The position numbers and the translations under genes were made by a program. Shown here piece by piece: positions 12,616 to 33,230 of a stretch of 64,000 nucleotides of DNA. The stretch covers positions 1 to 64,000 of IMG/VR virus record IMGVR_UViG_3300035181_000357. The stretch is one strand, 5' to 3'. Numbering within the stretch: position 1 is the stretch's first letter; each line of letters begins with the position of its first letter. The notes under the pieces are model-generated. The model made no database searches. It saw only the letters and a list, made by a program, of their open reading frames with translations, and was not told the DNA's origin.

Positions 12616-13206
12616 TTAATCGATAACTCTTATGAATTTCATACCAGAATTCCTAGATATCCAGGATAATGCTGGTCTATCATACTCGGGTTGAGGTCTA
12701 TCTGTTTTATATATGACTGTATTAACATTCCGAACTACACATTGTTTAGCACAATCTAAACAGGGGACAGCTGAGCAGAATAACACATACCCATCTTTGT
12801 CATTCAGATTAGATACCCTTGAAAATGCATCTATTTCTGCATGTATAGTCAGTCTACAGGTTCTTTCAGGTTGACATCCTATATCATTACATGAGAGTTC
12901 GTTGTCTTTTGAATATGGATAACGATTATATCCATATTCAGATTCTCTACTTTGGATAGAATAGATACATGACCCTATCTTAGCTCTACAGCATGGGGAG
13001 AAAGAACTTGTGATCTCTATATCCTTGAATATTTTAGATGTAAATTCATCTAGTTCAGCCAAGCCACCTAGCCCGAGAAGACCTGTTAAATAACTAGCCA
13101 TATCAAATTCTGGTTCCACTGGATACCAGATTATATTGTCACTATAGTCTAACTTTAGTTTAGACTCAGTTAAAGGATCACCGAATTCTTCTTGGACGAA
13201 TCGCAT
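12616..13206 (-). CDS. dCMP deaminase-like protein
   Basis: SPC....IG, GYN, HAE, PCLDC Zn-deaminase motifs, after a ~65-aa N-terminal extension. Confidence 0.8.
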   Translation of the reverse strand: MRFVQEEFGDPLTESKLKLDYSDNIIWYPVEPEFDMASYLTGLLGLGGLAELDEFTSKIFKDIEITSSFSPCCRAKIGSCIYSIQSRESEYGYNRYPYSKDNELSCNDIGCQPERTCRLTIHAEIDAFSRVSNLNDKDGYVLFCSAVPCLDCAKQCVVRNVNTVIYKTDRPQPEYDRPALSWISRNSGMKFIRVID

Positions 13207-13484
13207 TAGAGCTCCTTGAACTTAGATACCAAGGTCTCGGCCTTTTCAAGCGTCTCTTCTATCTCAGCCAGTACTTTTTCAGATTCAGCTTGAAGCTTCT
13301 CCTGCAGTTCCTTTATCTCCTGAACAGATAGTTCTTCTACATCATATCCAAGATCAGAAAGTTCTTTCATAGCTCTCTTCTTATTCTGCTCTTCGACAGC
13401 AATCTTACCTACGATCGCTTCTTTGCTTTTAGTGAGAGTCACTACTCTCTTCTCAACGGCTGCAATTCTCTCTTGAGTATCCAT
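13206..13484 (-). CDS. Small coiled-coil protein
   Basis: 92 aa, heptad-rich and E/K/L-rich; directly follows SbcC-N. Confidence 0.6.
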   Translation of the reverse strand: MDTQERIAAVEKRVVTLTKSKEAIVGKIAVEEQNKKRAMKELSDLGYDVEELSVQEIKELQEKLQAESEKVLAEIEETLEKAETLVSKFKEL

Positions 13485-14660
13485 TTAAACCTCTACTTTA
13501 AACATGTAACCACACTTAGGGCATTCTACTTTTGACGCTTGTTCTATCTGTTCTTGCTTACGGAGATCCTTTAAATCTCCTGATGTAGATTCTAAATCTG
13601 ATGATACTGTATCTAAGTCATTTTTGAGCAGCTTCAATAACCTGATATATCCGATGTAGTTGGGAAGTAACAGACACGCCGTATCTAGGTCTAGCAATTT
13701 CTTCTTATCTTTATTCAAGGAATCAGTGTCTAGAGCCTTAGTATCCAGGGTCACACTCTTTTTATTATATACATCTAAGAGGTATACAATAGAAGATAGT
13801 CTGGATTGTTTGTTTACAAGCTCCACTAGTTCCTTGAATGTTTCTAAACTTTTAGAAGATAAAGAATACGCGTACCTTGAATATCTATATGTGGATAGTA
13901 GACTAGATACCTTAGAGTTATTGGCTACAGGAGTCAAATCAAAATCTAGAACATCTATCTCAGATTTAGTCTCTACTAACTTATCTAGTTTATCAGATGT
14001 GATTAAAAATGTATCGACACAATCTACTGTGTCTAACAGTTCATTGTTCCTAGAATCCAATTTCTTTAAAGTTTTGGAAACAGGTTTAGCTTGTTCCAAG
14101 AACATACTTAGTTTATGTGCTTTAGCCTCTGCATCAGTTATCATCTTAGCCGTTACTTTAGCCTCTACATCTAGTTCTTTTATCTTCGTACCGATCCTTT
14201 TCTTACCTTGATCTAATTTCTCTGTTGAAGAAAATGCACCCAACACAGTGTTCAAATCAGCTGGTGAACTACAAAGAAGGAATTGATTATCAAACTGACC
14301 ACCAAAGATGGGATCAAGCTCGACATTCCCAATATGGATAGAAGAGTACCCCATCTTAGCAACAGCTTCTGGGATATTCCCTGCGAGCTTCCCATACTCT
14401 ACACCGTTCACGGTATAAGTAGTAGCAGCCTTCGTAGTTCTTTTAGCAACGACAGTGTTCTTATCAAAAGAGATAGAAACAGCTAATTCTGTCTCACCTA
14501 TCTTGATCTTGTTAGCACCGATATCATTCCTAAATGTTCCACGAATCATTCGAAATACAGAAGACTTACCAATATCTGAGGGACCCACTATAGCAGTGAA
14601 TCCCTCGATATCAAGAAATGCATCTGACCAAGATTGAAAGTTAGATGCTTGTACTCGCAT
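13485..14660 (-). CDS. SbcC/Rad50/gp46-like ATPase, N-terminal half only
   Basis: NFQS, Walker A GPSDIGKS, Q-loop GQFD, coiled coil, ends in CPKC zinc hook. No signature motif or Walker B. Confidence 0.85.
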   Translation of the reverse strand: MRVQASNFQSWSDAFLDIEGFTAIVGPSDIGKSSVFRMIRGTFRNDIGANKIKIGETELAVSISFDKNTVVAKRTTKAATTYTVNGVEYGKLAGNIPEAVAKMGYSSIHIGNVELDPIFGGQFDNQFLLCSSPADLNTVLGAFSSTEKLDQGKKRIGTKIKELDVEAKVTAKMITDAEAKAHKLSMFLEQAKPVSKTLKKLDSRNNELLDTVDCVDTFLITSDKLDKLVETKSEIDVLDFDLTPVANNSKVSSLLSTYRYSRYAYSLSSKSLETFKELVELVNKQSRLSSIVYLLDVYNKKSVTLDTKALDTDSLNKDKKKLLDLDTACLLLPNYIGYIRLLKLLKNDLDTVSSDLESTSGDLKDLRKQEQIEQASKVECPKCGYMFKVEV

Positions 14661-15913
14661 TAGAACTCGTCTTCATCGTCTAAAATATCAGCGGATCCAT
14701 CGAATTCAGCGATATCTACACCATCTTCTTTGTGACCAGCCACTAACATCTCACCCTCGGTCAATACCGTATCAAAGGCTCCAGAATTATCAGAACGAAT
14801 GACTTCAACGAGCTGAGCTTTCAATCTGGTTAAGACCTCGAGATTTTCATCATAGACTAGATCTCTTACAGCCTGTTCCTTGTTGTCGTAGGTAGCGATG
14901 ATGTCTTCGTCGATCCCGACGAGCCACTTCTGACCCTTGTTCCTAATAAGACCATAACTACGAGCAAGCTCACGAACAGACATCCAATCATCAAGGCCAC
15001 GACCAGTTCTAAGATAGATAGAGTATTCTCTGTAGCTACCCATCGTAACCTTGTTCTTAAGAACTCGAACCTTGACCTTGGTAGCTTTGACACTCTTTGA
15101 GCTATTACTGTCAGACTCTGCTTCCATCAAGAAAGGATCGTCCACAGCACCCTTTAAAGCCTTCTGAGCATTGACTTCGATCATCAAAGATGGGACGTAG
15201 CGAACACTGTTTCCACCAGGTAGAACATATGGTAGATTGGTGTAAGATGGGTACTTTTGAGCCATAGCAGCCTCTTGACTACCATCGATACGAGCACGAA
15301 TCTGATTAACCATCAAGAATGAACAATCATGCTGCATTGCATATGGTAAAAGAATATCGAAGAAACGAACCATCATACGAGCGTGTTCTCCGACGCTTGC
15401 CTTGAAAGCTTGACCACTGCGGATGTCCTTCTTGTCTCGCTTCTGCTTCATCTTTGGAATGGAGTCGAATACGAACAGCTTACATCCGGCTTCAATGTAC
15501 TCCACAGCCTTCTGAATACAGTCCTCAATATCCGAGATCTTGAATACAGCGAGACCTGGACCAGTATTAACACCGACATTCTTAAGGTATTCGAAGGTGA
15601 CAGTTCCTTCAAAGTCGAAGATTACTGCAGGTAATCCAGTTTCTTTCTGGTAATTCTTCACCAAGTGATAACAGATAGTTGATTTACCGCCATGTTCTTT
15701 ACCATGAATATGGATTACACGACCACCAAAGGGGATACCTTGTAATCTTAGAACTTCATCCCAGACAATCGAATTGGTTGGGACCTTATGTTCTTGGTAA
15801 TTCTCGTCGATTAGGAACGAATTCGCATCATCTTTATACGATGCAGATAAAGAGGCAAACCTTGTCATCACATCACCACTAAGATCTTCTGATTTTGTTT
15901 TCTTTCTTGCCAT
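14660..15913 (-). CDS. recA: RecA/UvsX recombinase
   Basis: GIPFGGRVIHIHGKEHGGKS, FDSIP, NQIR, GGNSVRY..S, KNKV. Confidence 0.9.
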   Translation of the reverse strand: MARKKTKSEDLSGDVMTRFASLSASYKDDANSFLIDENYQEHKVPTNSIVWDEVLRLQGIPFGGRVIHIHGKEHGGKSTICYHLVKNYQKETGLPAVIFDFEGTVTFEYLKNVGVNTGPGLAVFKISDIEDCIQKAVEYIEAGCKLFVFDSIPKMKQKRDKKDIRSGQAFKASVGEHARMMVRFFDILLPYAMQHDCSFLMVNQIRARIDGSQEAAMAQKYPSYTNLPYVLPGGNSVRYVPSLMIEVNAQKALKGAVDDPFLMEAESDSNSSKSVKATKVKVRVLKNKVTMGSYREYSIYLRTGRGLDDWMSVRELARSYGLIRNKGQKWLVGIDEDIIATYDNKEQAVRDLVYDENLEVLTRLKAQLVEVIRSDNSGAFDTVLTEGEMLVAGHKEDGVDIAEFDGSADILDDEDEF

Positions 15914-15925
15914 GCTATCTCCCAG

Positions 15926-16735
15926 TTACACTGTGTATGATACTTTGAGAAGACGCTTCTTAGGTGGAATCCTAGCATCTTTAACCACAACCGAATATTC
16001 TGATCTAGTATAATCAAACCAATATATGGGATTATGAAATAATCCTTTAGTAGTGGTTTTCATATTTCGACCCTTGCCTTTCAATACTTCTTTATCTTCG
16101 CATAGAATCTTCACTATATTCTGAGGGACGCTTTCAATCTTCTCCTGAAGAATCAAGGCTGCATATATACCCATCTGGGTTAATAACACTCCATCACAAG
16201 AATCACTATCAAGACCTGGATATTCTATTAAGGGTATGAAGGAGAATGCTCTTTCTATATTTTCTTTTTTGTTCCCTGCTCCTCTTTGGATTAGACCCAT
16301 AGCTGATCTAAGTGTTGAGGCATTGACGCTCAATGTCCACACTTTATACTTATGTAGAATTGAAGTTTCTGAAAACAGGACAGAGGTAACTACCCTGTTT
16401 AGTGATGTTAAAAAATCATTCATTGGAGTTGGAGTTTCCATTGATAGAATAATTATCGGAGTTACCTGGATAGTCTCAATGGCAGATTCTATCTCTTTTA
16501 GTATAGATATACCTATCAATGTGCTCCGTACCCAGATCGGATCTGAAGATTTCTCAGGTTTGAATGAACCTATCTTAATGATCTCTGGTACATCTTCTCC
16601 CCTACGCATTAGAGATATAGAATAACCAGTCCTAGATAAACTAAGATCCATCCCAACAATCAGAAAATCTCCGTGTATAGGATTCGGATAGAGAATGGAC
16701 ACCTTTGAATTTTTACTTTGTTTAGACTCCTTCAT
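15926..16735 (-). CDS. RuvC-like Holliday junction resolvase
   Basis: IVGMDLSLSRTG, SMETP and DSDSCDG acidic RNase H-fold triad. Confidence 0.75.
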   Translation of the reverse strand: MKESKQSKNSKVSILYPNPIHGDFLIVGMDLSLSRTGYSISLMRRGEDVPEIIKIGSFKPEKSSDPIWVRSTLIGISILKEIESAIETIQVTPIIILSMETPTPMNDFLTSLNRVVTSVLFSETSILHKYKVWTLSVNASTLRSAMGLIQRGAGNKKENIERAFSFIPLIEYPGLDSDSCDGVLLTQMGIYAALILQEKIESVPQNIVKILCEDKEVLKGKGRNMKTTTKGLFHNPIYWFDYTRSEYSVVVKDARIPPKKRLLKVSYTV

Positions 16736-17027
16736 AAACTGCTAGAACTCTCTTGATATCTGCTGGGTGTTCAGGATGCTCAGGAAGATCAGAGGTATCC
16801 TTACAAATTACGATATACCCTTCTTCGAGATCCTGTCCTTTGAATACCTTGTATCCATCGAATTCACCAATATGTGGTGTTCCCAAATCTGTAGGATTGA
16901 AGCCTGAATCAGCTGCTAATACTTCCAGTTCTTCAGAATTGGCTACGATTGAACTATTCTCTAGATTTGCACCACCATGTTCTTGTTGAAACCTAGCTAC
17001 ACTATTCTTAAACCACGTCATATCCAT
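16722..17027 (-). CDS. Hypothetical protein
   Basis: 101 aa with an AGGAG RBS. Confidence 0.6.
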   Translation of the reverse strand: MDMTWFKNSVARFQQEHGGANLENSSIVANSEELEVLAADSGFNPTDLGTPHIGEFDGYKVFKGQDLEEGYIVICKDTSDLPEHPEHPADIKRVLAVYEGV

Positions 17028-17028
17028 A

Positions 17029-17076
17029 GTATTCTCCTATGAGAATACCCAGACCCTGATCGCAGAGTCTGGGTAT
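17029..17076 (-). promoter_or_regulatory. Two overlapping hairpins, one occluding the RBS of the 16722..17027 gene
   Basis: 14-bp stem including a G.U pair (17045-17076) overlaps by 4 nt with GTATTCTC-ATAG-GAGAATAC (17029-17048). Confidence 0.5.
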
Positions 17077-17089
17077 AATTTCTTGCATC

Positions 17090-17920
17090 TTAGATGTCTT
17101 CAATCTCGTCGATATCAGACTCGTCGTCATCACCCTTGTTAGCAGCGGTGAGGTAGCCATTCAGCTCAGCCTTGGTGATCTTCTTAGGAAGACGCTTGCT
17201 CAACTTAACACCATCAAGATGAGATACTAACTCTTCCTTGACAGCAGAAACGAGCTCAGGATTTGACAGATACTTGGCCTTTGAACTGATCCTAGTGTAG
17301 TCATACCCAATACCAGAATTTGGCTGGAACATCAAGATATCGATACCATATACAGTTCCATCTTCCTCAGCAAGTCTGCTGATCTTGGCATACTGCGTTC
17401 TGGAAAGCTTGATGTATTTGATCTTGAACTCAACAGGCTGATCCTTGCGAAGCTTACCATCCTTGAGACTGGCGTTCGTATAATGAAGAACCAGTGCCAC
17501 GATGTCTAAACCTGGATCTCCGAGAGCTACACAGCACTTGGCCTTTGGAGCCTTCTTGTCAGAATGATCGGTTAAGCAGCGGAAACTACCCTTGCCCTCG
17601 ACATAGTGACTATATGCTCTCTTTGGCTTGACTTCAGAAAGAATAGTGAATCTTGCGAACTGCTCTTTCTCCTTGACTTCCAGACGTTCCAGGAAGCCAG
17701 TATTCTTCATTAACTCTTCGTCACCGAAGTCAACATCATCTTCGTCATCGATAGCTGGCTTTGATGATTTCTTAGGCTTAGGACTCTCATCCTCGTCATC
17801 GTCGATGACGACTTTCTTCTTCTTGACGACTACTTCCTCTTCATCCTCGTCACGGACTTGTTTCTTCTTAGGCTTCGGAGTGATTTCCTCATCCTCTAAG
17901 TCTTCATCATATTGTGCCAT
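17090..17920 (-). CDS. Single-stranded DNA-binding protein (gp32-like), probable start MAQYDED
   Basis: Central H..C...CC putative Zn site, aromatic beta-strands and acidic C-tail DDDESDIDEIEDI. AAGGAG RBS precedes ATG 17920. Confidence 0.6.
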   Translation of the reverse strand: MAQYDEDLEDEEITPKPKKKQVRDEDEEEVVVKKKKVVIDDDEDESPKPKKSSKPAIDDEDDVDFGDEELMKNTGFLERLEVKEKEQFARFTILSEVKPKRAYSHYVEGKGSFRCLTDHSDKKAPKAKCCVALGDPGLDIVALVLHYTNASLKDGKLRKDQPVEFKIKYIKLSRTQYAKISRLAEEDGTVYGIDILMFQPNSGIGYDYTRISSKAKYLSNPELVSAVKEELVSHLDGVKLSKRLPKKITKAELNGYLTAANKGDDDESDIDEIEDI

Positions 17921-18028
17921 CGTTGGCTCCTTTTGTTGGCTGGTTCTCAATTCTGAGAACGATGTCGGTATAAGCTTGATACTCTTCTTTAACATCGTTC
18001 TCAGACCTTTTCATAAATCCAGTCTAGA

Positions 18029-18352
18029 TTAAGCCTGGACCTTTTCTAGTTCACGAAGCTGTGAGCTAGCTAGGAACTTGATCTTACGCTTTGGCTGGCC
18101 CATCTTCTGCTCGCCAGTCTTAGGAACCTTAACCATCTTAGCTGGCTTGTGGGTTACACGGAACTGACCGAATCCATGGATCTTGAACTTGAAACCATCG
18201 GTAGCAACGTTAGCAGCTAGGATGTCATGGACGGCAGAGAGTACGGCTTCTACGGTTTCAGTAGCGGCCTTGGCGGTAGGAAGGTTTAGCTTTTCCTTTA
18301 CGAGAGCCTCTAGCTCTTTACGGTTAGCTTCTGTCTTTAGTAGTTCAGTCAT
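18029..18352 (-). CDS. HU/IHF-like DNA-binding protein
   Basis: NRKEL...V, IHGFGQFRV..KPAK...PKTGE......KRKIKF. Confidence 0.9.
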   Translation of the reverse strand: MTELLKTEANRKELEALVKEKLNLPTAKAATETVEAVLSAVHDILAANVATDGFKFKIHGFGQFRVTHKPAKMVKVPKTGEQKMGQPKRKIKFLASSQLRELEKVQA

Positions 18353-18392
18353 TTAAGACTCCTTTAAAATGAGGTACGACCTCTGGGTGAAA

Positions 18393-19688
18393 TCAGATGA
18401 TGTCTTCCAAATCATCATCGTTGAATACAGGTTTAGGGCTGATACCCTTTGCTGGCTTTTCCACTTGCTTTAATTTGAATTGTTCTTGAGCCATTGAAAT
18501 TGCAGGAAAATCATCGTCGTCATCAGCAACTGGAATAGCATCCTTTGAAGAACTAGCAGATACCTCGAAATCCTTAGGAGGTGCTGTTACCTTAGTTGCT
18601 TTCTTAAAGAGGATAGGCTCGTCATCATCTTCTTCTACAGGAGGTAGCGATTTTCCTTCTGTCTTTGTTACCTTGTTATCCTCAACCTTTATCTTACCAA
18701 GGAATGGATCATCGACCACAGCAACTACGATTGGAGATACCTCTTGAACCGTTCTCTTGACGATCTTTTTGTGGGCTTCGACCATTGCTACTTGATCTTC
18801 AGAGAAGTCAACGGCTGGAGAGAATTCGGTTTCTTCCTTTTCGAAGACTACATCTTGTTCAGGATCGGCCATTTGATTCTTGAAAGCATCATCAATCACA
18901 TGATTCTGAATAATGATATCTTCTGGATCTTCCTCATCATTAAGAGCCTTATACAATACAGGCTCGTCGTCATCTACCTCTTCTTCAGGTAGAGGTGGCT
19001 GCTTAAAATGTTCCCCATATCTTTCTTGAAGCTTCTGATATTTAGGTAATCTGACAGCTTCATTTCCAAACTCAGAAGGAGGAGCTATGTTAGAGATCGA
19101 GGCATTAACCTGATCCTTAGCCATCTTGTACTTCTCTTGAGCCAGATTCTTGTGTGACTTTAACATACCAAGATGAATCTCAACTGACTGAATCATAGCC
19201 TCAATATCTAGGTCCTGACCCTTCATCAATCGGCTGAATTCTGAGTCTCCGAGAGACTTGATCGCTGAGATAGGAATCTTGATCTCGTTTGATCTAAGAG
19301 CCTGTGATAACGCGATTTGATACCAGGCACTGAATGTAGCACCAACATTTTCAACACTCTTCTGAATACTCTTTAGACGAGACTGAAAGAATACTGCCTT
19401 TACTGATACCTGTTCTAATTGGTCTAGAACTTCTTGTAACGTGTTCGTAACAGACAGAATGTAAGCATATTCAGTACCAGGTGCGATCGTAGAATTTAGA
19501 TCGAAGGACTTAAGATTACCAATATCCTTTCGGAGTAGATTGAAATAGTCTCCGACAGATACTTGACCATCTTCTGTTTGATAATTCAAACTCTCGCAGA
19601 TCTGATTTATCTGATCCAAAATAGGAGCACCAGACAACAGGACTTCAGCAGAAAATAATTGTACATTTATGTTCATACGAACTTCCAT
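18393..19688 (-). CDS. Hypothetical protein (coiled-coil N-half, acidic low-complexity C-half)
   Basis: 431-aa ORF, no family recognised. Confidence 0.6.
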   Translation of the reverse strand: MEVRMNINVQLFSAEVLLSGAPILDQINQICESLNYQTEDGQVSVGDYFNLLRKDIGNLKSFDLNSTIAPGTEYAYILSVTNTLQEVLDQLEQVSVKAVFFQSRLKSIQKSVENVGATFSAWYQIALSQALRSNEIKIPISAIKSLGDSEFSRLMKGQDLDIEAMIQSVEIHLGMLKSHKNLAQEKYKMAKDQVNASISNIAPPSEFGNEAVRLPKYQKLQERYGEHFKQPPLPEEEVDDDEPVLYKALNDEEDPEDIIIQNHVIDDAFKNQMADPEQDVVFEKEETEFSPAVDFSEDQVAMVEAHKKIVKRTVQEVSPIVVAVVDDPFLGKIKVEDNKVTKTEGKSLPPVEEDDDEPILFKKATKVTAPPKDFEVSASSSKDAIPVADDDDDFPAISMAQEQFKLKQVEKPAKGISPKPVFNDDDLEDII

Positions 19689-19984
19689 TTAATTGGATCA
19701 CAATCTGTTAATACATACTGGCTACCAATTCCTTTACTTTCTTTACATGGACCTAGTGCCCATACCACCTTAGTAACTAACTCCACAGGGGTTACAAATT
19801 CTGCTACAGGTACCGTCTTTTCATACACTAGAACGATCTCTCTGGTCTCGAAACCATCGGTAACCAGAGTCCCTGGAACTACCATTCTTTCTTCAAAGAA
19901 ATCTAGAACAGGTCTAAGAGTCTCCTTGCTTGCATATCCACAGAAGACATTGGATACTAAATTATACAATTCCTTAGTTTTCAT
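19673..19984 (-). CDS. Hypothetical protein
   Basis: 103-aa coupled ORF. Confidence 0.55.
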   Translation of the reverse strand: MKTKELYNLVSNVFCGYASKETLRPVLDFFEERMVVPGTLVTDGFETREIVLVYEKTVPVAEFVTPVELVTKVVWALGPCKESKGIGSQYVLTDCDPIKWKFV

Positions 19985-24051: not shown

Positions 24052-24942
24052 CTAAGTGAACTCAAGTTCCTTTTTATTTATCCAATATTCATATGGGTCT
24101 TTGAACTTATCTTTCAACATCCATACCCTATGACCATCAGCTTTAAGTCTATTACTGTATTCAGCCCCTACTTCGTCAGAATCTAATATAAATACTAATT
24201 TCAGACCCTCGAGTTGCTTCCAGTGCATGTCAGAAATGAATGCACTACCCAATCCAACCGATTGCATCCCAAGCTGATCACAAGCTACATGATCAAAGAA
24301 CCCTTCTACTACGTAGACAGTCTTGTTGGGATCTATTTTATGAAGACCGAACGTAGCCGATCTACCATGAGAGAATAGCCACTTTGCCCAGAACTTGCTG
24401 ACATGTTCATCCACATATCTGAATACCAGGTTATTTAGATTCCCTTGTCTATCGTAACTAGGCATAACTATCTGCTCTTGAACTAACATATCGGTGGGTT
24501 CACCTAATTGTTCTAACTTGTAGCTAGCGTATTCTAGCTCTTCTTTATAGAATGGGAAATATCTAGATAACGATTTATAATCATGATCTCGGTATCGCCA
24601 TGAACTCATTTGGTATTCATGGATCAGGTCCATTGGAAATGACCTAGCCTTTAGATAGTCCGAGCATATTTCTGACATAGGTTGGCTCAAGATATCGTTA
24701 ACTTCATCTATACATAAATCTGGATGTCTAGGGACATAGTCAGGATACCCGAATTTCGTAGCTATAGACTTGGCATAATCTCTGTTTACGGTATGATGAT
24801 CTAACGCTGCTTTCATCTCACCATGAGGAACTAGTAACTTGGCTAGTTCAATACCCTCTTCTGGTACGAAGTACTCCAGAAATGGTAGAGGATCAATAAC
24901 CAATTTATACCGTAACTTTTTCTTAGGTCCAGGATTCAACAT
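24052..24942 (-). CDS. DnaG-type primase catalytic (TOPRIM) protein 1, no Zn finger
   Basis: VYVVEGFFD...G....V...G.A, ILDSDEVG, KDP.E. Confidence 0.75.
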   Translation of the reverse strand: MLNPGPKKKLRYKLVIDPLPFLEYFVPEEGIELAKLLVPHGEMKAALDHHTVNRDYAKSIATKFGYPDYVPRHPDLCIDEVNDILSQPMSEICSDYLKARSFPMDLIHEYQMSSWRYRDHDYKSLSRYFPFYKEELEYASYKLEQLGEPTDMLVQEQIVMPSYDRQGNLNNLVFRYVDEHVSKFWAKWLFSHGRSATFGLHKIDPNKTVYVVEGFFDHVACDQLGMQSVGLGSAFISDMHWKQLEGLKLVFILDSDEVGAEYSNRLKADGHRVWMLKDKFKDPYEYWINKKELEFT

Positions 24943-25817: not shown

Positions 25818-26223
25818 CTAGATCATCTGCTTTATCCATTAATCTCTTACCCTTATCGAGTTGAGCCTTCATTACATTTAAAACAACTTGTACGTCGTCT
25901 TCCCACTGGTGTGGATCGGTCATCAATACAGGTTCACCATGCTGTTTTAATACAACCATGACACAGAAAGCAGTATTTCCGAAATGAATAGGAGCACCTG
26001 CTAATCCATATGAACTGTCTTTTCCCATATTTACTAGCTCGATGTCGGCAGACCACTCTTCATCAGAGCCAGAACCAAACATAGCTGGTACATCAGTATA
26101 AGTTCTTAGAGGGATCCCAAGAACCTTAGCGTACTCTTCTGGGGATTCTGGTTTTTCTGATCGGCCGAAACCAGGTAGATCACTAGAATCCAATGCCGTT
26201 TTACGGGTCGTGAGTTTAGACAT
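25804..26223 (-). CDS. Hypothetical protein
   Basis: 139 aa, N-terminal MSKLTTRKTA, AGGAG RBS. Confidence 0.6.
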   Translation of the reverse strand: MSKLTTRKTALDSSDLPGFGRSEKPESPEEYAKVLGIPLRTYTDVPAMFGSGSDEEWSADIELVNMGKDSSYGLAGAPIHFGNTAFCVMVVLKQHGEPVLMTDPHQWEDDVQVVLNVMKAQLDKGKRLMDKADDLGGGA

Positions 26224-26267
26224 TAAAATCTCCTAAAAATATATCACTCAGCTTAGTATTACAAAGT

Positions 26268-27116: not shown

Positions 27117-27121
27117 ATTTC

Positions 27122-28174
27122 CTACTTATTGATTAGCCTTGCGAAATTAAGAGCACCTCTTGCAGTAGCATCGAGGGGATACGTAGCGGAACGAGCTGTC
27201 CCGACACGGAAACGAACATTGAGATTCTTCATAAAGATGTCATTGAACATCTTATCGAAACCAGGAATTAAGCTAGTACCACCAGAATAAATAACTGGTA
27301 CCAGTTCCTTAATCTCAGTACGATTTGCTGGCATTGCAAAGAACTCATTTACAGCATCTACTAACTTAGTTAGAAGTTCCTTGTACATCAAGGAGATAGC
27401 TTCTGCCTGTCTCTCTGACTGGGCATCATGTGATGTATCAGGGTTGATAATTCTGCCAGTAACAACATCTACTCCATGTTCCTTCAACATTGTAATGTGA
27501 GAGGAAAGAGAGTTAGTGGCCTTGGCTGCACCATCATCGATGAAATCACCACCGAAAGGAATGCTGAACATTCTAACAGGTAGAGATTTGTACGTGCATG
27601 CTACGTTAATCATACCAGCACCAAGAGATACACTAAGTGCGGTTAATGGTAGTTCATCCGCGTTCTTTGGAGACATAGTCTCACTGTAGGTTACAGCTAC
27701 GGCCTCGTTAATTGCTCTAGCCTTGAAACCTAATCCGTTGATGAGTTCCTGGAAAAATCTGCTGTGAAAGTTTAGATCGTTCGACTGAATGACTCCGTTC
27801 TCAAAAATTGGACCCGGAATAGAGAAAGCAGCTACTTCTCCTGTTCCTTTGCCTAAGATCTTCTCAAGAATCAGAGATACTACAGCCTTACCATCCTCTT
27901 CCTTAGAACTTATGAAACCCTTAGATAGTGGGCGACGCAGTTCACCACCGAGAGCCCCAGCAAGCTCAACAGCATCTGCACCTACTACATAAAGGTTCTC
28001 TGCACCTTGTACGAAAGAGATTCCGGACATCTCGAGCATAGGTGCTTGCTCCAACGGAAGTGATAAGAAGCAATCTCGTACGCTGCTAATCTCTACCTTT
28101 GCGTCAGTGCTTTGTACTGCGGCCACCATGAACGCAGTTCCAACGTCAACGCCTTGGGGATTTACTTTAGACAT
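27122..28174 (-). CDS. Actin-like ATPase (MreB/ParM/FtsA superfamily), probable start MSKVNPQ
   Basis: Phosphate-1 GVDVGT, connect-1 NEAVAV, phosphate-2 SLGAGMINV, GGDFID, adenosine YSGGTSLIPGF, connect-2 ARG. Confidence 0.85.
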   Translation of the reverse strand: MSKVNPQGVDVGTAFMVAAVQSTDAKVEISSVRDCFLSLPLEQAPMLEMSGISFVQGAENLYVVGADAVELAGALGGELRRPLSKGFISSKEEDGKAVVSLILEKILGKGTGEVAAFSIPGPIFENGVIQSNDLNFHSRFFQELINGLGFKARAINEAVAVTYSETMSPKNADELPLTALSVSLGAGMINVACTYKSLPVRMFSIPFGGDFIDDGAAKATNSLSSHITMLKEHGVDVVTGRIINPDTSHDAQSERQAEAISLMYKELLTKLVDAVNEFFAMPANRTEIKELVPVIYSGGTSLIPGFDKMFNDIFMKNLNVRFRVGTARSATYPLDATARGALNFARLINK

Positions 28175-29276
28175 TCTTTCTCCTTTTAACTTGGATGTCT
28201 TTTCTAGATTTCTTACTACGCCCATCATTACATACTTCTTCTGAAGTTACTGATAGCCAAGGAGCCATCTTAGACAGCTCTTTTATAGAGATTTTATAAG
28301 AATTCCCGTACTTGGTAATGACGTCTTTATATGACTTAATGTCCTTATCTTGCCCATACATAGTCTTAGTAATGTGATATTTAAGGACGCACCAGGCAAT
28401 GACTAGATTCTTAGGTCGTTTGATCTTATCTTCTTTGATAGCTTCAAACAACTTGGCAGCGATCGCTCTCACATCTTTCTCACCAGCGAAGATCATGTTC
28501 TTGACGAAGGCAGTAATCATCTGCTGATTTGTTCTCTTTACCTTAGGTTTGATCTTCTTATCCACATGCTCGAGATCTTTGACAGCATCTTGGAATTCAT
28601 AGTCATCAACAGTCTTAATCTTAATATTTATCACTCGTTCTCCTACCAGATCTTCTATCAACAGAGATTTCAACTCTGGACCATCCTCTAAGATAGGTGA
28701 GTAATAGAATACCCTTAGATCTTTGGGAATAGTGTCTAAATTCAATAAATTCTTAAGTGGGGTCTGAACCATCATTGATGTTGTCTTGAGATCGACTTGT
28801 ACCACAGCTCTAGTTGCTGCTATGCTCTTTACTATACCACAGAAGTCTCGAGTATGACCATCTAAGATTCTGACAAAGGAGCCAGGTACTATCCCGATGT
28901 TCCTATGATCATACGTTTCCTTACATTTAGTAACAAGTCCTTGGATATAACTATCTTCTATGTTTATGAGACGATTTGGATGGGTTCCCTCACCATGGCA
29001 TACCAACCATACTACACCTGTCACAGATCGCAATTTCACAATCTTCTTAGGATCTAGGGAACGGACGAATATATAGCAATCCGTCATGAGTTCGAAGGAT
29101 TCAAGATTCCTATCAGAGACGGGAATAAAGATTTCTGCTGGGTCTTCTCTGAAGATGTTCTTGAGACTTTTCCCAATTCTCTTTATAGTCTCTTCACTAG
29201 TCTTTTCAGAACGAAGCTCAATAACATTCCATATTTTGCCAGTTAATTTAGAGGTATCACCGTATGTTAATATCAT
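28167..29276 (-). CDS. NusG-family transcription factor (NGN + KOW) with C-terminal extension
   Basis: WNVIEL...EIFIP......YIFV.....VTGV NGN domain; PGSFVRILDG..RDFCG.V KOW motif; ~190 extra C-terminal residues. Confidence 0.8.
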   Translation of the reverse strand: MILTYGDTSKLTGKIWNVIELRSEKTSEETIKRIGKSLKNIFREDPAEIFIPVSDRNLESFELMTDCYIFVRSLDPKKIVKLRSVTGVVWLVCHGEGTHPNRLINIEDSYIQGLVTKCKETYDHRNIGIVPGSFVRILDGHTRDFCGIVKSIAATRAVVQVDLKTTSMMVQTPLKNLLNLDTIPKDLRVFYYSPILEDGPELKSLLIEDLVGERVINIKIKTVDDYEFQDAVKDLEHVDKKIKPKVKRTNQQMITAFVKNMIFAGEKDVRAIAAKLFEAIKEDKIKRPKNLVIAWCVLKYHITKTMYGQDKDIKSYKDVITKYGNSYKISIKELSKMAPWLSVTSEEVCNDGRSKKSRKDIQVKRRKNV

Positions 29277-30190
29277 ATATCTCCCAATACTTTAATTCTA
29301 CCCTTAAACATCTGCATGATATCAGAGTTATCTTCGGGTTCGACATTTTTCTGAGGTGAATCCTCTAGCACTACCTGCTTGACCTGAGCCTTTATCTTGG
29401 TCACACATTTAGACAACTCATACAAGAACAGAGGTAGAATATCGACAGATGTCTGGACATTCCACTTTAGGAATAATGTGGTAACTTTCTCAGTTTCAGG
29501 AAAAGAACTCCTGATGGCTTCCCTGATCCTAGTTTCTTCTTTGGATATATACTCATCTTTGTCGAAGAAGCATTTTCCATAGTATGAGAACATATAGTTG
29601 ATAACTGTTTTATCTTCTTGTTCTTCACAGATAGCCATAGCCTCTTCTAGATTTCCGGTAGCCACAGCAGTGAAAGTTTTATATGCGATCTCATCTTCGT
29701 TGTTTTCCAGATTATCGTTCACTGATTCCCTGGATATCTTTCCTATCTTAGACAGAGTAGCTATGAAATTCTTAGCTTGTCTAATATTCCCTCTCGACTT
29801 CCTTACTACGCGATTCAAACCCTCTACAGTAAATCCAATGTTATTCTTAGAACAGAGAGCCATCAAGTACCCAACCATGTCTTTTTGATTTACCTTATTA
29901 AGATGAATCCTACAAGCTCTGGATCTGGTTGTTTCAGGTAATTTATCGTAATCCTGAACTTCCATAAAAGTCGTATGATGCTCAGAACTCAGTTCATTGG
30001 AGATAGTATAGGATATATTTTCTTTATCCAGTACTGAAGCTAGGTAGTTTATTATACTAGTTTTACCAGTACCTGGAGGTCCATCAAGGATTACCAATCT
30101 CGGGAATCTCTTTATATCAGTAAGTAGACCTCTGATGAGTTTCAGAGGTCTATCTTGCCCGATTATCTGGTCTAGACTTAGTAGTTCCAT
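29273..30190 (-). CDS. DnaX/clamp-loader-like AAA+ ATPase
   Basis: LDQIIGQD, GPPGTGKTS, SRA (SRC-like), SRGNIRQA sensor-2. Confidence 0.8.
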   Translation of the reverse strand: MELLSLDQIIGQDRPLKLIRGLLTDIKRFPRLVILDGPPGTGKTSIINYLASVLDKENISYTISNELSSEHHTTFMEVQDYDKLPETTRSRACRIHLNKVNQKDMVGYLMALCSKNNIGFTVEGLNRVVRKSRGNIRQAKNFIATLSKIGKISRESVNDNLENNEDEIAYKTFTAVATGNLEEAMAICEEQEDKTVINYMFSYYGKCFFDKDEYISKEETRIREAIRSSFPETEKVTTLFLKWNVQTSVDILPLFLYELSKCVTKIKAQVKQVVLEDSPQKNVEPEDNSDIMQMFKGRIKVLGDI

Positions 30191-31459
30191 TTACTCTTCT
30201 GATTCCGTTAAGAACGATACAGGCTTCATACCAGTAGTGGTATCATCGGCTTCGATCTCTAGTACACGCTTGATCAGTGATACATATAGATCTTCGAAGA
30301 TCGATAGACAATTTAGGTAAGCTAATGTATACTCACTGTAAGAGTGGCTATCTTCAGAATGACTATCGATAAAATTCTTGGTCAATTCAACATTCTTCAG
30401 AACCTGAGTCAAGCTAGTGCAGATATTAACATTGACTTTCCAAGACTTTGGACCATCTTCGATACCAACTGAGACATCAGAAGCCAAGACATTCCAAGAT
30501 TCGATCTCAGACAGAATCTCCCAACAACTAATGTTATCGGTTGCACCTACAGATGCCTTCAACTTCTCATCACAGATGACAGAAGGGGTCTGTAGGTCAA
30601 CGACATAACTGTCGTCTGAATACTGGCAGTACGTCTTTTTCTTCTTATATAGAAGACCGATTAATGGATAACGCTCCTGTAACTCAGCAAACTTGACATC
30701 GTCAAGATATGAACCCACGAGTTCATCCATCTCTGTGTTGATGATGTTCCCAGCTAGAATCTTCTTGAAGAAGTCGTATTGCCATGGTGTCCCATTAGGT
30801 CCAAAATACAGTGTAGTAGCTTTGAGTTCAATATCGAAAGACGACTTAAAGAAATCATTAAGATACATCAGTGACTTATCGTCCGTCATATCTGTGTAGA
30901 TTCTTCCAGTCTCGAAATCAACGAGCACCACGTTCTGCTTTCTATCAGAAGTAATCTCCTTGTCTAACATATCTTTAACTTCATTCTTGTCATCAGAATA
31001 GAGAAGACGGAAAGGCATATGATACATGTTAGCAGCGATCTGTTCCTTCTGTGATTCCTGATCCTCAAGGTCGATACGTTTACGCTTTACAAACCAGAAA
31101 GCAGCGGCAGTATCGGATAGCATCATAGACTCTAAACCGCCATAGCAAGGACTGAAATCTACCTCGTCACCACCAACATCCAATACTGAATTTCCAACGA
31201 CTCTGTCAACAAGGGCATAGAAGATATCTTCGGCATCCTTGTTTGTTGGGTTGATTGGGTTGATAACATCTAATCTTGCCTGACTGATGGGATTGATCCC
31301 GACCGTCATTTCATTGGCTTCATCCCAAAGTCGCACATTAGCTGCAGCAGCTGAGATACCTAGCCAATCATTAAAATTCTTAAACTTCTCTAAATCGTCT
31401 TCCTTCGTATCTTGAGCTAACTCTAGTCTAGCCCATGAAGATTTCCCGTATAAAGACAT
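30191..31459 (-). CDS. Hypothetical protein, possibly RdgC-like
   Basis: Central DKNEVKD.L...VVLVDFETGRIY......L.DFFKSSF resembles the RdgC core by eye; weak. Confidence 0.35.
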   Translation of the reverse strand: MSLYGKSSWARLELAQDTKEDDLEKFKNFNDWLGISAAAANVRLWDEANEMTVGINPISQARLDVINPINPTNKDAEDIFYALVDRVVGNSVLDVGGDEVDFSPCYGGLESMMLSDTAAAFWFVKRKRIDLEDQESQKEQIAANMYHMPFRLLYSDDKNEVKDMLDKEITSDRKQNVVLVDFETGRIYTDMTDDKSLMYLNDFFKSSFDIELKATTLYFGPNGTPWQYDFFKKILAGNIINTEMDELVGSYLDDVKFAELQERYPLIGLLYKKKKTYCQYSDDSYVVDLQTPSVICDEKLKASVGATDNISCWEILSEIESWNVLASDVSVGIEDGPKSWKVNVNICTSLTQVLKNVELTKNFIDSHSEDSHSYSEYTLAYLNCLSIFEDLYVSLIKRVLEIEADDTTTGMKPVSFLTESEE

Positions 31460-31460
31460 G

Positions 31461-32258
31461 TTACTCCTCTTCCTCTAAAATGGTTATGTTTGTAGCCATC
31501 ACTGACTCGTTCTTATCTATAATACGTCTTAAAGTGTCCCTAAGTATCAATGCGTGTTTCCTATTCTCTAAGGCAAGGCTGGCGTCCTTCCCAGGTGTCT
31601 TCACTATCTCCACAGTCATAGACTTGAAGGTTCTGGCTACGATCGTCATGGCTTCAATACCGACAGGATCCTGGTCGAACATGAGATATAGGGTCTTGAC
31701 TCCAAGCATCTGGAGATAGGCTTCCTGTTTTCTACCGATCTTCTTTGTTAGCGAGCAGAGAACTGGAATATCTGCATTTAGTGCTCTAACAGCTACGAAA
31801 TCGAAAGTACCTTCCACGACTAAAACATATCCTAGTTTCTGGATCCTGGCGAGCATCTCATTACTGTTCCCAAGCCAACTTGGTCCTAGAAAATTATCTC
31901 TATCCCCTGCGATCCAATATTTTGCACCATCTTCACCTAGAGGTTTTGTCTGTGCCTTCATTGCTACATCGTTAAGATCATATTGTGGGAATACGAATCT
32001 TGGACCAGGTTCAAATCCCTTTGGTACATACATAATAGTATGATCTGATACACATTTGGTCAAGTTAGGTTTGATCAAGTCCTCAACCTGTCCCCAATTA
32101 CGTTCTTTAATGATCTTTATGACACTTGCTTGTACCCAACCAGACTTACCCTTCTCTTCTAACCTCTTGTACAAGCCCTTGACTTTCCTGATCAAGAACT
32201 CTACATCATCCCACCACTTTTTACTCATTCTTCCCCATCCAACATTCCTAATACCCAC
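31461..32258 (-). CDS. TOPRIM primase-like protein 2
   Basis: VLVVEGTFDFVAV, LYLMFDQDPVG, PGKDAS. Confidence 0.7.
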   Translation of the reverse strand: MGIRNVGWGRMSKKWWDDVEFLIRKVKGLYKRLEEKGKSGWVQASVIKIIKERNWGQVEDLIKPNLTKCVSDHTIMYVPKGFEPGPRFVFPQYDLNDVAMKAQTKPLGEDGAKYWIAGDRDNFLGPSWLGNSNEMLARIQKLGYVLVVEGTFDFVAVRALNADIPVLCSLTKKIGRKQEAYLQMLGVKTLYLMFDQDPVGIEAMTIVARTFKSMTVEIVKTPGKDASLALENRKHALILRDTLRRIIDKNESVMATNITILEEEE

Positions 32259-32593
32259 AGGAGAACGGCTACGTCGCGATATTCACGAGGTAGGATTTGT
32301 GGATCCTTTATCTCTTCTCTGAAACCTTCGAGCAATTCTTCTTTTGTATATTTAGGTTGGAACAGATCATGATCTTTGCAAGAATCGGGATCTTTAGATT
32401 TACAGAAAGTACATCTATCCTCACCAAAATCTAGGTGTTTCACCATATCAGGATTTACGAAAGATAGTGCACCTTTACAGTTACCGACACATGGTTCAGA
32501 ATTTCTTTTAAGAAACTTCTTCTTGTGTCTGTGGATCAGGTCTCTTAGCCTTTTCTGTATTTCCTGACTTGATTTTATTTTTATCTCTGCCAT
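32225..32593 (-). CDS. Hypothetical Cys-rich protein
   Basis: C..NC ... C.FC....SC motifs. Confidence 0.5.
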   Translation of the reverse strand: MAEIKIKSSQEIQKRLRDLIHRHKKKFLKRNSEPCVGNCKGALSFVNPDMVKHLDFGEDRCTFCKSKDPDSCKDHDLFQPKYTKEELLEGFREEIKDPQILPREYRDVAVLLWVLGMLDGEE

Positions 32594-33230
32594 CTGTGGT
32601 TATTTCCATAATGGATTGTGGATCTATTTCTTTAATCGTAGGACCAGTCGGTCCTTCTGCTACTTGATACACTCTGTCAGCAGCAGAAGCTAATTCAGGT
32701 TGATGTGTTACGGCCAGAATCTTGAACCCATGGTCATTTGTGAGAGTTTGTATCAATTCCGATACCTTTGGTAAATACTCTTTACTGACATTATTAAAAC
32801 TCTCGTCAACTGCCAGGAACTTAGCCATTTTAAATCTTTTAATCATGATTACACGAAGAAGAAACGAGGCTAGATTGACAACCCCACCACCAAATGAATC
32901 GAAAGGATCACCAACGAGATCACCTTTCTTAATCTGGATCTTGTAGGTAGTTCCTTTAGCTCCATCTTTCTTTTCGATGACTAAACTGGTCTTCTTACCG
33001 AAGACTAGACGTATACCACCAGTTACAATGGATTCAATCTTACCGATCCCCTTGGAACTGACTATCTGTGTCATCTTGTCGATAGTTCCCTGGGCCTTGA
33101 CCAGATTTACTTTGGTCTCTAGCAAGGAATCCACCCTCTTTCTGAGAGAATCTATATTACTGTTCTCCGAATCGAGGACACGGGATTGGGAATCTACAAA
33201 ACTACTGAACTCTTGAATGTTTATCATCAA
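32508..33230 (-). CDS. SbcC/Rad50-like ATPase, C-terminal half only
   Basis: Short coiled coil, signature SFGGG, Walker B FLAVDE, H-loop VTHQ. No Walker A. Confidence 0.85.
   Translation of the reverse strand: MMINIQEFSSFVDSQSRVLDSENSNIDSLRKRVDSLLETKVNLVKAQGTIDKMTQIVSSKGIGKIESIVTGGIRLVFGKKTSLVIEKKDGAKGTTYKIQIKKGDLVGDPFDSFGGGVVNLASFLLRVIMIKRFKMAKFLAVDESFNNVSKEYLPKVSELIQTLTNDHGFKILAVTHQPELASAADRVYQVAEGPTGPTIKEIDPQSIMEITTDGRDKNKIKSGNTEKAKRPDPQTQEEVS

What the first reader, a model, noticed from the sequence alone, without database searches (positions are those of the whole stretch)
13206..33230. Rad50/SbcC split at the zinc hook into genes about 18 kb apart, possibly with a third coiled-coil piece
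Seen: 13485..14660 has Walker A, Q-loop and coiled coil and ends in CPKC; 32508..33230 has a short coiled coil, signature, Walker B and H-loop. The 92-aa all-coiled-coil ORF right after the N-half could supply the missing return strand, since the N-half arm is much longer than the C-half arm. Known: ABC-type Rad50 heads need both lobes, normally from one chain. Inference: a two- or three-chain Rad50 assembled in trans with SbcD. No intein motifs were seen at the split ends.
Basis: partly seen in the sequence, partly recalled or inferred. Interest (0 to 1): 0.65.

Follow-up and report, generated by a model that had tools for sequence, protein, structure and literature searches.

The report
Naturally split phage Rad50 ATPase
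A jumbo phage, like many of its relatives, encodes its Rad50/SbcC-type DNA-end-processing ATPase as two separate genes far apart in the genome, cut just after a zinc-binding CPxCG motif, together with a conserved small helical protein and an SbcD-type nuclease gene; no published description of this layout was found.

Summary
Window 13485-14660(-) encodes an ABC/SMC head N-lobe, about 230 aa of helix, and a CPKCG motif 8 aa from its end. Window 32508-33230(-) encodes a 77-aa helix plus the C-lobe. Their models best match, respectively, the N- and C-terminal chains of engineered two-chain Rad50/SMC heads.

The split is a family trait:
- All 32 N-halves examined stop 5-20 aa after their last CxxC.
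- In a search without a length filter, the best 150 C-half relatives are short, free-standing proteins (105-323 aa, mostly 200-270); 2,135 clusters score E<=1e-10.
- In 19 related phage records the halves lie 15-131 kb apart and are never fused.
- 6 of 6 complete relatives have one of each and no conventional SbcC.

The 92-aa ORF belongs to a conserved family that always lies just downstream of the N-half. Its binding is unproven.

An SbcD-type nuclease and UvsX flank the N-half. No intein is present at the split ends.

One caveat: most relatives carry a second ligand pair after CPxCG, so "zinc hook" is not established.

Verdict: a real, conserved, multi-chain Rad50/SbcC equivalent. It is a new variant of a known kind, and no description was found in the searchable literature.

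The parts
13485..14660 (-). N-half of the split Rad50/SbcC-like ATPase (391 aa): head lobe I with Walker A and Q-loop, about 230 aa of helical arm, and a C-terminal CPKCG.
   Evidence: Translation. Pfam AAA_15/AAA_23 below cut-off and phrog_16465 'exonuclease' at 2e-18. Family alignments. AF2 model with pLDDT 61. Foldseek top hits are the N-terminal chains of two-chain Rad50/SMC heads.
14562..14585 (-). Walker A motif, GPSDIGKS (residues 26-33).
   Evidence: G26, S28, G31, K32 and S33 are invariant in 11 of 11 sequences.
13509..13523 (-). CPKCG zinc motif (residues 380-384), with 7 residues before the stop codon.
   Evidence: C380 and C383 are invariant. A weak in-register profile match to the P. 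furiosus Rad50 hook structures 1L8D and 6ZFF. All 32 N-halves examined end 5-20 aa after their last CxxC.
13206..13484 (-). Conserved 92-aa helix-turn-helix protein. Its start abuts the N-half stop codon. Candidate third subunit.
   Evidence: Family of 32 proteins, 31 of them 89-100 aa (one 60-aa entry), with an invariant Gly at the turn. Found just downstream of the N-half in 18 of 19 related records, in Tunturi_5 and in 0305phi8-36. Junction sequence TAA-ATG.
32508..33230 (-). C-half of the split ATPase (240 aa): N-terminal helix 2-77, then lobe II with SFGGG signature, Walker B D-E and H-loop. The last ~27 aa are disordered and not conserved.
   Evidence: Translation. phrog_15167 'ATPase' at 1.7e-16. 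AF2 model with pLDDT 84. Foldseek top hits are the C-terminal chains 1XEW_Y, 1F2T_B, 3KTA_B and 9A9J_B. Profile match to M. jannaschii Rad50 3AUX at 6.9e-5. Motif counts.
11520..12509 (-). SbcD/Mre11-type nuclease (329 aa), the presumed nuclease partner.
   Evidence: Pfam Metallophos at 1.1e-8, above cut-off. NCBIfam SbcD (capping region) at 2.5e-5, below cut-off. phrog_100 'SbcD-like'. 37% identity over its full length to Tunturi_5 gp177, annotated 'SbcD-like'.
14660..15913 (-). UvsX/RecA-type recombinase. Its stop overlaps the N-half start by one base. Given as context.
   Evidence: Pfam RecA at 9e-19 and phrog_97 'UvsX-like' at 8.9e-39. The RecA-then-N-half order is conserved in all neighbourhoods read.
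12616..13206 (-). dCMP deaminase gene, lying between the small protein and SbcD. Not considered part of the machine.
   Evidence: Pfam dCMP_cyt_deam_1 at 3.1e-8. Present at this spot only in the closest relatives; absent there in L015 and Tunturi_5.

Best explanation
The two genes encode complementary halves of the phage's only Rad50/SbcC-type ATPase.

- The N-half supplies lobe I (Walker A, Q-loop), the rising helix of the arm and a terminal CPKCG zinc motif.
- The C-half supplies the descending basal helix (residues 2-77) and lobe II (signature, Walker B, D-loop, H-loop).
- The halves are inferred to join without a covalent link. The joining would happen by completion of the ABC head fold and by antiparallel pairing of the C-half helix with the first N-half helix (146-235), as in the engineered two-chain Rad50 and SMC heads used for crystallography.
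- Two such heads would sandwich ATP and work with a dimer of the adjacent SbcD-type nuclease. This would process DNA ends for UvsX-driven recombination and replication.
- The 92-aa protein is most likely a third stoichiometric subunit that packs on the distal arm or zinc end of the N-half (about 50% likely).
- In the window's clade, the two-Cys tail probably pairs two N-halves through a shared zinc ion, as a hook does.

Shown here: gene anatomy, motifs, folds, conservation, co-occurrence and linkage. Inferred: physical assembly, stoichiometry, zinc binding and enzymatic activity.
For: - Motifs are intact and conserved in both halves.
- The C-half model (pLDDT 84) matches the C-terminal chains of two-chain Rad50/SMC heads at E of about 1e-8 and TMt 0.7-0.77. 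The N-half model matches the N-terminal chains of the same entries.
- The window's genome holds exactly one hit for each profile and no other SMC/ABC head fragment.
- Among 22 related IMG/VR records, 22 have one C-half and 19 have one N-half. The three without are 26-27% complete. All 6 records that are >=90% complete have the N-half, the C-half and the small protein.
- Those complete relatives have no conventional SbcC.
- The halves are never fused. They lie 15-131 kb apart, on opposite strands in 5 of the 19 records.
- A profile search of 1.84 billion proteins without a length filter gave 2,135 clusters at E<=1e-10. The best 150 are short (105-323 aa, mostly about 200-270), matched from their N-termini.
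- Nuclease linkage is seen in four layouts: SbcD downstream in the window and its relatives; an overlapping cluster of N-half, Metallophos, 84-aa protein and C-half in L034; and Mre11 fused to the N-half in 0305phi8-36 gp8 (PMC3175470).
- The small protein is a conserved family in a fixed position.
Against: - No direct test of N-half and C-half association was run.
- Pfam and NCBIfam matches of both halves fall below the curated cut-offs. The fold cannot separate Rad50 from SMC.
- The N-half model has low confidence (pLDDT 61), so the arm geometry is unknown.
- The arm is asymmetric, and N-half arm length varies by about 95 aa with no matching change in the partners.
- 22 of 32 N-half tails carry four possible zinc ligands, which argues against a classical shared-zinc hook for the family as a whole.
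- The window's record is only 69% complete.
Confidence: 0.8

Rival explanations
1. The 92-aa protein is only a conserved neighbour, for example a regulator or a partner of UvsX or SbcD. It is not part of the Rad50 arm, and the N-half arm folds back on itself.
For: - The complex prediction did not reach the mark (which is not evidence either way).
- N-half arm length varies by about 95 aa while the small protein stays at 89-100 aa.
- The N-half model has two helix breaks that would allow fold-back.
- The 84-aa protein in L034 shows no detectable homology to the family.
- Magritte has the split without a clear small-protein homolog.
Against: - The small protein holds a fixed position just after the N-half in 18 of 19 records and in Tunturi_5, 0305phi8-36 and several metagenomic contigs.
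- Its start often overlaps or abuts the N-half stop.
- It persists even where Mre11 is fused to the N-half.
Confidence: 0.4
2. The pair is a split SMC-like ATPase of another kind (RecN-, RecF- or condensin-like) and not a functional Rad50/SbcC equivalent.
For: - SMC heads score as well as Rad50 heads in the fold search.
- Family matches are below curated cut-offs.
- Magritte's N-half has no CxxC.
Against: - The CPxCG motif is invariant and matches the Rad50/SbcC hook consensus.
- An Mre11/SbcD-type nuclease is encoded beside it, fused to it or interleaved with it.
- It lies next to UvsX.
- No other SbcC exists in complete relatives, whereas a published survey of jumbo phages finds SbcC and SbcD practically universal (PMC7824862).
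- No kleisin-like partner was seen.
Confidence: 0.08
3. The two halves act apart, each with some other partner such as host SbcC or another phage fragment.
For: The genes are far apart, sometimes on opposite strands, and so probably lie in different transcription units.
Against: - Half of an ABC head lacks either the P-loop or the Walker B and signature motifs, so it cannot hydrolyse ATP alone (established knowledge of ABC ATPases).
- There is exactly one of each piece per genome and no spare fragments.
Confidence: 0.03
4. The halves are joined after translation by a split intein, or the split is an assembly error or a decayed gene.
For: - Inteins do occur in this family.
- Homing endonuclease genes are common in the region in relatives.
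Against: - Only 5-20 residues follow the last CxxC of any N-half.
- The C-half starts directly with a confidently modelled helix that aligns to Rad50 coiled coil and has no Cys at all. There is no room for intein fragments.
- Where a real intein exists it is plainly detected, and it sits in the Walker A motif.
- The same boundaries recur in cultured-phage genomes and many independent assemblies, with catalytic residues conserved.
Confidence: 0.01

Closest known systems
Phage T4 gp46/gp47 and E. coli SbcC/SbcD (Rad50/Mre11-type end-processing complexes)
   Same: - An ABC/SMC-type head with Walker A and Q-loop in one lobe and signature, Walker B and H-loop in the other.
- A helical arm and a CPxCG motif.
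- A partner calcineurin-fold nuclease encoded nearby.
- In phages, a link to UvsX-type recombination.
   Different: - Here the ATPase is made of two polypeptides from genes 15-131 kb apart, and the chain ends just after CPxCG.
- The arm is asymmetric: about 230 against 77 helical residues.
- A conserved 90-100 aa protein accompanies the N-half.
- Sequence similarity to curated SbcC/Rad50 models is below threshold.
Engineered two-chain Rad50 and SMC head constructs (P. furiosus Rad50 1F2T/1F2U/3QKR/9A9J; SMC 1XEW/3KTA)
   Same: - N- and C-terminal head segments made as separate chains assemble into an active ABC head.
- The window's halves match exactly these chains, N to N and C to C.
   Different: - Those are laboratory truncations that delete the arm and hook.
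- The phage version is natural, keeps the arm and zinc motif on the N-chain, and is conserved across a large family.
Mre11-Rad50 fusion proteins (Mimivirus R555; Bacillus phage 0305phi8-36 gp8), PMC3175470
   Same: 0305phi8-36 gp8 contains a member of this N-half family: it scores 3.2e-34 against the N-half profile and ends 17 aa after CPTC.
   Different: - That paper reported one P-loop NTPase segment as 'not observed' in the Bacillus phage.
- Here the missing segment is identified as gp5, a separate gene that scores 1.1e-21 against the C-half profile, with the small-protein homolog gp7 lying between them.
- In the window, the nuclease is not fused.
Fractured genes with split inteins (PMC2677866; only the abstract was seen)
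   Same: An essential DNA-metabolism gene is broken into separately encoded pieces, in genomes rich in homing endonucleases.
   Different: - There are no intein fragments at the break.
- The pieces are expected to stay as separate chains.

Membership tests
Rad50/SbcC (SMC-like ABC ATPase partner of Mre11/SbcD) | N-terminal lobe with Walker A and Q-loop | tested here: met
   GxSxxGKS and Q122 are invariant in 11 of 11 sequences.
Rad50/SbcC (SMC-like ABC ATPase partner of Mre11/SbcD) | C-terminal lobe with signature motif, Walker B, D-loop and H-loop | tested here: met
   The (S/T)FGGG motif is near-invariant, D142-E143 is present in 37 of 37, and the H-loop His is present in the window and in 24 of 37 relatives. 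The signature is a variant of LSGGQ/E.
Rad50/SbcC (SMC-like ABC ATPase partner of Mre11/SbcD) | SMC/Rad50-class head fold | tested here: met
   Foldseek: the C-half matches 1F2T_B, 9A9J_B, 3QKR_B and 1XEW_Y at E of about 1e-8; the N-half matches 3QKR_A, 9A9J_A and 1F2U_C at E of about 1e-4. This does not separate Rad50 from SMC.
Rad50/SbcC (SMC-like ABC ATPase partner of Mre11/SbcD) | Both lobes and an antiparallel coiled coil made by one polypeptide | tested here: not met
   Two genes 17.8 kb apart. They are never fused in relatives.
Rad50/SbcC (SMC-like ABC ATPase partner of Mre11/SbcD) | CxxC zinc hook at the arm apex, flanked by both helices, shared between two chains | tested here: inconclusive
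   The CPxCG consensus is present and invariant, with a weak in-register match to 1L8D and 6ZFF. However, it sits at the chain end, and 22 of 32 relatives add a second ligand pair. Zinc binding and dimerisation cannot be tested here.
Rad50/SbcC (SMC-like ABC ATPase partner of Mre11/SbcD) | Mre11/SbcD-type nuclease partner | tested here: met
   A Metallophos gene lies at 11520-12509, above the Pfam cut-off. The nuclease is interleaved in L034 and fused in 0305phi8-36. This shows linkage only; binding was not tested.
Rad50/SbcC (SMC-like ABC ATPase partner of Mre11/SbcD) | Score above curated family thresholds (Pfam SMC_N/AAA_23, NCBIfam SbcC) | tested here: not met
   AAA_23 scores 21.6 bits against a cut-off of 27. 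SMC_N scores 15.8 against 40. There is no NCBIfam SbcC match.
Rad50/SbcC (SMC-like ABC ATPase partner of Mre11/SbcD) | ATP-dependent control of nuclease activity on DNA ends | not testable with these tools
   This needs biochemistry.
Split-intein 'fractured' gene | Intein N- and C-fragments at the broken ends, with a nucleophile at +1 | tested here: not met
   The N-half has only a 7-aa tail after CPKCG. The C-half begins with a helix modelled at pLDDT above 90 and contains no Cys. As a positive control, a true intein in relatives is detected at the Walker A motif.

The most novel reading that the evidence does not exclude
A large lineage of mostly huge phages builds its only Rad50 as an obligate three-chain ATPase: N-half, small helical protein and C-half. 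The arm would be assembled from separate polypeptides, and the chain would end at the zinc motif. That would show that covalent continuity through the arm apex is dispensable for Mre11-Rad50 function. Because the C-half lies in a different transcription unit, its supply could act as a timing switch for nuclease activity during infection.
Probability: 0.25. Interest if true: 0.75.

Novelty: new variant of a known kind. Interest (0 to 1): 0.62.

Why it matters
- **A long-standing question in the field.** How ATP-driven head movements are passed along the coiled coil to the zinc hook, and whether chain continuity through the apex matters, are debated for Rad50 and the SMC proteins. A natural, widespread Rad50 that ends at the zinc motif, and receives its second head lobe from another gene, is a ready-made system for testing this. 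Cultured representatives exist: Tunturi_5, 0305phi8-36 and Magritte.
- **Annotation.** The pieces are currently labelled 'exonuclease', 'ATPase', 'chromosome segregation ATPase' or 'hypothetical'. An earlier paper recorded the second ATPase segment of 0305phi8-36 as missing (PMC3175470).
- **Counting core genes.** Surveys that count SbcC as a core jumbo-phage gene could miss or miscount this form.

Tried and rejected
- **Complex prediction.** Complex prediction with N-half, C-half (1-213) and the 92-aa protein as the chain in question returned 'no answer' (score 0.27, mark 0.32). It is not evidence for or against binding.
- **Close DNA relatives.** A megablast search of the region against phage records found nothing. 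A pattern search with the C-half alone in viral contigs found no relatives; the alignment-based scan did.
- **Single-sequence and profile searches of PDB sequences** gave only weak ABC, SMC and Rad50 matches.
- **The small protein** has no Pfam, PHROG or NCBIfam family, no informative PDB match and only unnamed viral clusters in the ESM Atlas.
- **L034's 84-aa protein** could not be shown to be homologous to the small-protein family.
- **0305phi8-36 gp6** (238 aa, between gp7 and gp5) shows no family match, and its sequence does not look like a coiled coil, so it was dropped as an arm piece.
- **The second weak AAA_23 hit** in the window (29273-30190) is a clamp loader, not an ABC fragment.
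- **Literature.** Searches for a described split Rad50/SbcC found none. One search call failed on a format slip.
- **Sequencing reads.** No read-based or expression work was done, and nothing was sent elsewhere in its place.


Full report
**Setting.** The window is the first 64 kb of a 210.6 kb IMG/VR phage record that CheckV rates 69% complete. Genes are tightly packed on the minus strand. The region holds replication and recombination genes:
- a UvsX/RecA-type recombinase, an SNF2 helicase and an HU protein;
- two Toprim proteins and a clamp loader;
- a dCMP deaminase and an actin-like Volactin.

The nearest cultured relative by protein similarity is the 309 kb Tunturiibacter phage Tunturi_5. 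More distant ones are Bacillus phage 0305phi8-36 and Microbacterium phage Magritte.

**Observation.**
- *N-half.* ORF 13485-14660(-) gives a 391-aa protein with Walker A GPSDIGKS, a Q-loop Gln and then about 230 helical residues. The model shows helices at 146-235, 243-299 and 313-375. CPKCG occupies residues 380-384, leaving 7 residues before the stop.
- *C-half.* ORF 32508-33230(-) gives a 240-aa protein. It starts with a long helix (2-77), followed by an alpha/beta lobe with SFGGG, a Walker B motif ending in D-E, and an H-loop His.
- *Small ORF.* The 92-aa ORF 13206-13484(-) begins at the base after the N-half stop codon.
- *Nuclease.* An SbcD/Mre11-type Metallophos gene lies at 11520-12509(-).
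- *Recombinase.* The UvsX stop overlaps the N-half start by one base.

**What the halves are.** Sequence family matches are weak and below the curated cut-offs. The N-half hits AAA_15 and AAA_23, and the C-half hits SMC_N. PHROGs, however, already holds each half as a separate family: phrog_16465 'exonuclease' and phrog_15167 'ATPase'.

Structure is clearer.
- The C-half, folded with 37 relatives, gives a confident model (pLDDT 84). Its best PDB matches are the C-terminal chains of the engineered two-chain SMC and Rad50 heads: 1XEW_Y, 1F2T_B, 3KTA_B, 9A9J_B and 3QKR_B, at E of about 1e-8 and TMt 0.7-0.77.
- The N-half model is poorer (pLDDT 61). Its best matches are the N-terminal chains of the same kinds of entries: 6QPW_A, 3QKR_A, 9A9J_A and 1F2U_C.
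- The C-half profile aligns its N-terminal helix to the coiled-coil stub of M. jannaschii Rad50 (3AUX, 6.9e-5).
- The N-half profile aligns its last helix and CPKCG, weakly but in register, to the P. furiosus Rad50 hook (1L8D and 6ZFF, E of about 0.03-0.04).

The two genes therefore encode complementary lobes of one SMC/Rad50-class head. It is established knowledge, from those very PDB constructs, that such lobes assemble when made as separate chains.

**The split is a conserved trait.**
- *N-half family.* The 13 N-half sequences first aligned (the window's, 11 word-search hits and Tunturi gp181) are 349-493 aa long and all end within about 12 residues of an invariant C-P-x-C-G.
- *C-half family.* The word search found 114 proteins, 113 of them 189-266 aa and one a 160-aa entry.
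- *Search without a length filter.* That first search cannot see longer proteins, so I spent the one exhaustive profile search on the C-half. It returned 3,788 clusters at E<=1e-3 and 2,135 at E<=1e-10. The best 150 (E<=1e-24) are all short (105-323 aa, mostly about 200-270) and matched from their N-termini. No fused, full-length protein is among the close relatives.
- *Related IMG/VR records.* In 22 related records, 22 carry exactly one C-half and 19 carry one N-half. The three without an N-half are only 26-27% complete. All six records that are >=90% complete carry an N-half, a C-half and the small protein.
- *Spacing.* The halves lie 15 to 131 kb apart, on opposite strands in five of the 19 records, and are never adjacent.
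- *Closest relatives.* In the two closest metagenomic relatives the C-half lies 18-21 kb upstream on the same strand, as in the window.
- *Cultured phages.* The halves are 108 kb apart in Tunturi_5 and about 93 kb apart in Magritte. In 0305phi8-36 two small genes separate them.
- *No alternative partners.* The window's genome has exactly one match to each profile and no other SMC/ABC head fragment. The complete relatives have no conventional SbcC/Rad50.

**Link to the nuclease.** The order RecA/UvsX, N-half, small ORF and then, with or without inserted genes, a Metallophos nuclease recurs in the window, in Tunturi_5 and in those metagenomic contigs that reach far enough. Two distant relatives are especially telling:
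- Contig L034 has four overlapping genes in the order N-half (ending 17 aa after CPLC), Metallophos nuclease, an 84-aa helical protein and C-half.
- 0305phi8-36 gp8 is an Mre11 nuclease fused to an N-half that ends 17 aa after CPTC. It is followed by gp7 (the small-protein homolog), gp6 and gp5 (the C-half).

[quoted passage not shown] The present analysis identifies that segment as gp5.

**The third piece.** The 92-aa protein belongs to a compact family. There are 32 database hits, 31 of them 89-100 aa and one a 60-aa entry, with two roughly 40-residue helices joined at an invariant Gly.
- It sits just downstream of the N-half in 18 of 19 related records and in both Tunturi_5 (gp180) and 0305phi8-36 (gp7). 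Stop and start codons often overlap.
- That is good evidence for a functional link and suggests a fixed-ratio partner of the N-half.
- Where it binds is unknown. The three-chain complex prediction gave no answer, and no library offers a lead.
- Against a strict one-to-one pairing, N-half arms vary by about 95 residues while the small protein and the C-half helix do not. The N-half model also has two breaks that would allow fold-back.
- I put the small protein being a subunit of the complex at roughly one in two.

**The zinc end.** CPxCG is the consensus of the classical Rad50/SbcC hook as I recall it (P. furiosus CPVCG, E. coli CPLCG). I checked that recollection only indirectly, through the in-register profile match.

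I examined 32 N-half tails.
- Ten have only these two Cys. They include the window, its closest relatives and Tunturi_5.
- The other 22 add a second ligand pair within about a dozen residues: CPKCG-x4-H-x-C, CxxC-x5-6-CxxC, or similar patterns with His.
- A four-ligand site on one chain would be a zinc knuckle rather than a shared hook.
- The two-Cys form in the window still needs a second chain, or other ligands, to complete a zinc site. Hook-like pairing of two N-halves therefore remains the simplest reading for this phage, but it is an inference.
- Magritte's N-half has no CxxC at all.

**Inteins.** None is present at the split. There is no room for one after CPKCG, and the C-half starts with a confidently modelled helix and contains no Cys. 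As a positive control, two relatives carry a textbook Hint plus LAGLIDADG intein in the Walker A motif (GK|C...HN|S) of the N-half. It is detected without difficulty.

**Mechanism.** The best-supported model is a multi-chain Rad50/SbcC equivalent.
- The N- and C-halves join through the head fold and through pairing of helix 146-235 with the C-half helix 2-77.
- Two such heads engage on ATP.
- An SbcD dimer supplies the nuclease.
- The product feeds UvsX-dependent recombination and replication.

The anatomy, folds and comparative genomics are shown. Assembly, zinc binding and activity are inferred. The rival explanations are scored in their own section.

**Novelty.** Databases already hold the pieces under assorted names. 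Five full-text searches found no description of a naturally split Rad50/SbcC. The two papers that touch 0305phi8-36 did not link gp5 to gp8. The principle that head halves can assemble as separate chains is familiar from engineered constructs, so this is a new variant of a known kind rather than a new kind. Its points of interest are:
- the break right after the zinc motif;
- the large scale of the family;
- the conserved small partner;
- the availability of cultured phages for experiments.

Noticed in passing
window 27122-28228 (-): An actin-like protein of the Volactin family (Pfam PF25216 at 2.3e-45, plus FtsA-like). The same gene occurs in the close relative L019. An actin homolog in a jumbo phage may bear on genome positioning or segregation.
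   Followed up: no
L086:399-2759 and L087:491-2779 (IMG/VR relatives G017 and G020): A canonical Hint plus LAGLIDADG intein of about 350 aa is inserted in the Walker A motif of the N-half (GK|C...HN|S).
   Followed up: yes
all N-half C-termini (A1; L070-L088; L034; L002): The zinc tail comes in three forms: two-Cys CPxCG only (the window clade, Tunturi_5), CCHC (CPKCG-x4-H-x-C) and CCCC (CxxC-x5-6-CxxC). It is unclear which is ancestral and whether they differ in dimerisation.
   Followed up: partly
window 33246-38480 (-): A 1,744-aa ORF directly upstream of the C-half has no Pfam, PHROG or NCBIfam match. Relatives have a 1,597-aa protein (faint NHL match) or a PKD-domain protein at the same place, so it may be a virion or host-recognition protein.
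   Followed up: no
L009, L011, L019 (close relatives): GIY-YIG/NUMOD3 homing-endonuclease genes are scattered through the syntenic region in relatives, one of them right after the C-half. They are absent at those places in the window.
   Followed up: no
L033:3339-4391 (Microbacterium phage Magritte gp155) and L004:284-934 (gp2): gp155 is annotated 'hypothetical protein' but is an N-half (5.7e-26 to the profile) without any CxxC. gp2, annotated 'exonuclease', is the C-half. They lie about 93 kb apart.
   Followed up: partly
G003:C1:158915-159556 and G003:C1:27727-28011: In one complete relative with terminal repeats, the search reported two TAA codons inside the C-half match and one TAG inside the small-ORF match. 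This could be match overhang, or something about stop-codon use.
   Followed up: no
window 32225-32593 (-) against 32508-33230 (-): A 122-aa ORF with no family match overlaps the last 86 bases of the C-half ORF. The C-half's last ~27 residues are disordered in the model and not conserved, so either boundary may be off.
   Followed up: no
G000:C1:157443-157733 (-), outside the window: A second Metallophos-family ORF (405 aa open frame) in the same genome. Only its N-terminal part matches the profile. The one next to the N-half is the likely SbcD partner.
   Followed up: no
window 24052-24942 (-) and 31461-32258 (-): Two separate Toprim-domain proteins (primase-like) lie between the two Rad50 halves. 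Tunturi_5 also annotates two short 'DNA primase' genes, so the primase too may be encoded in pieces.
   Followed up: no
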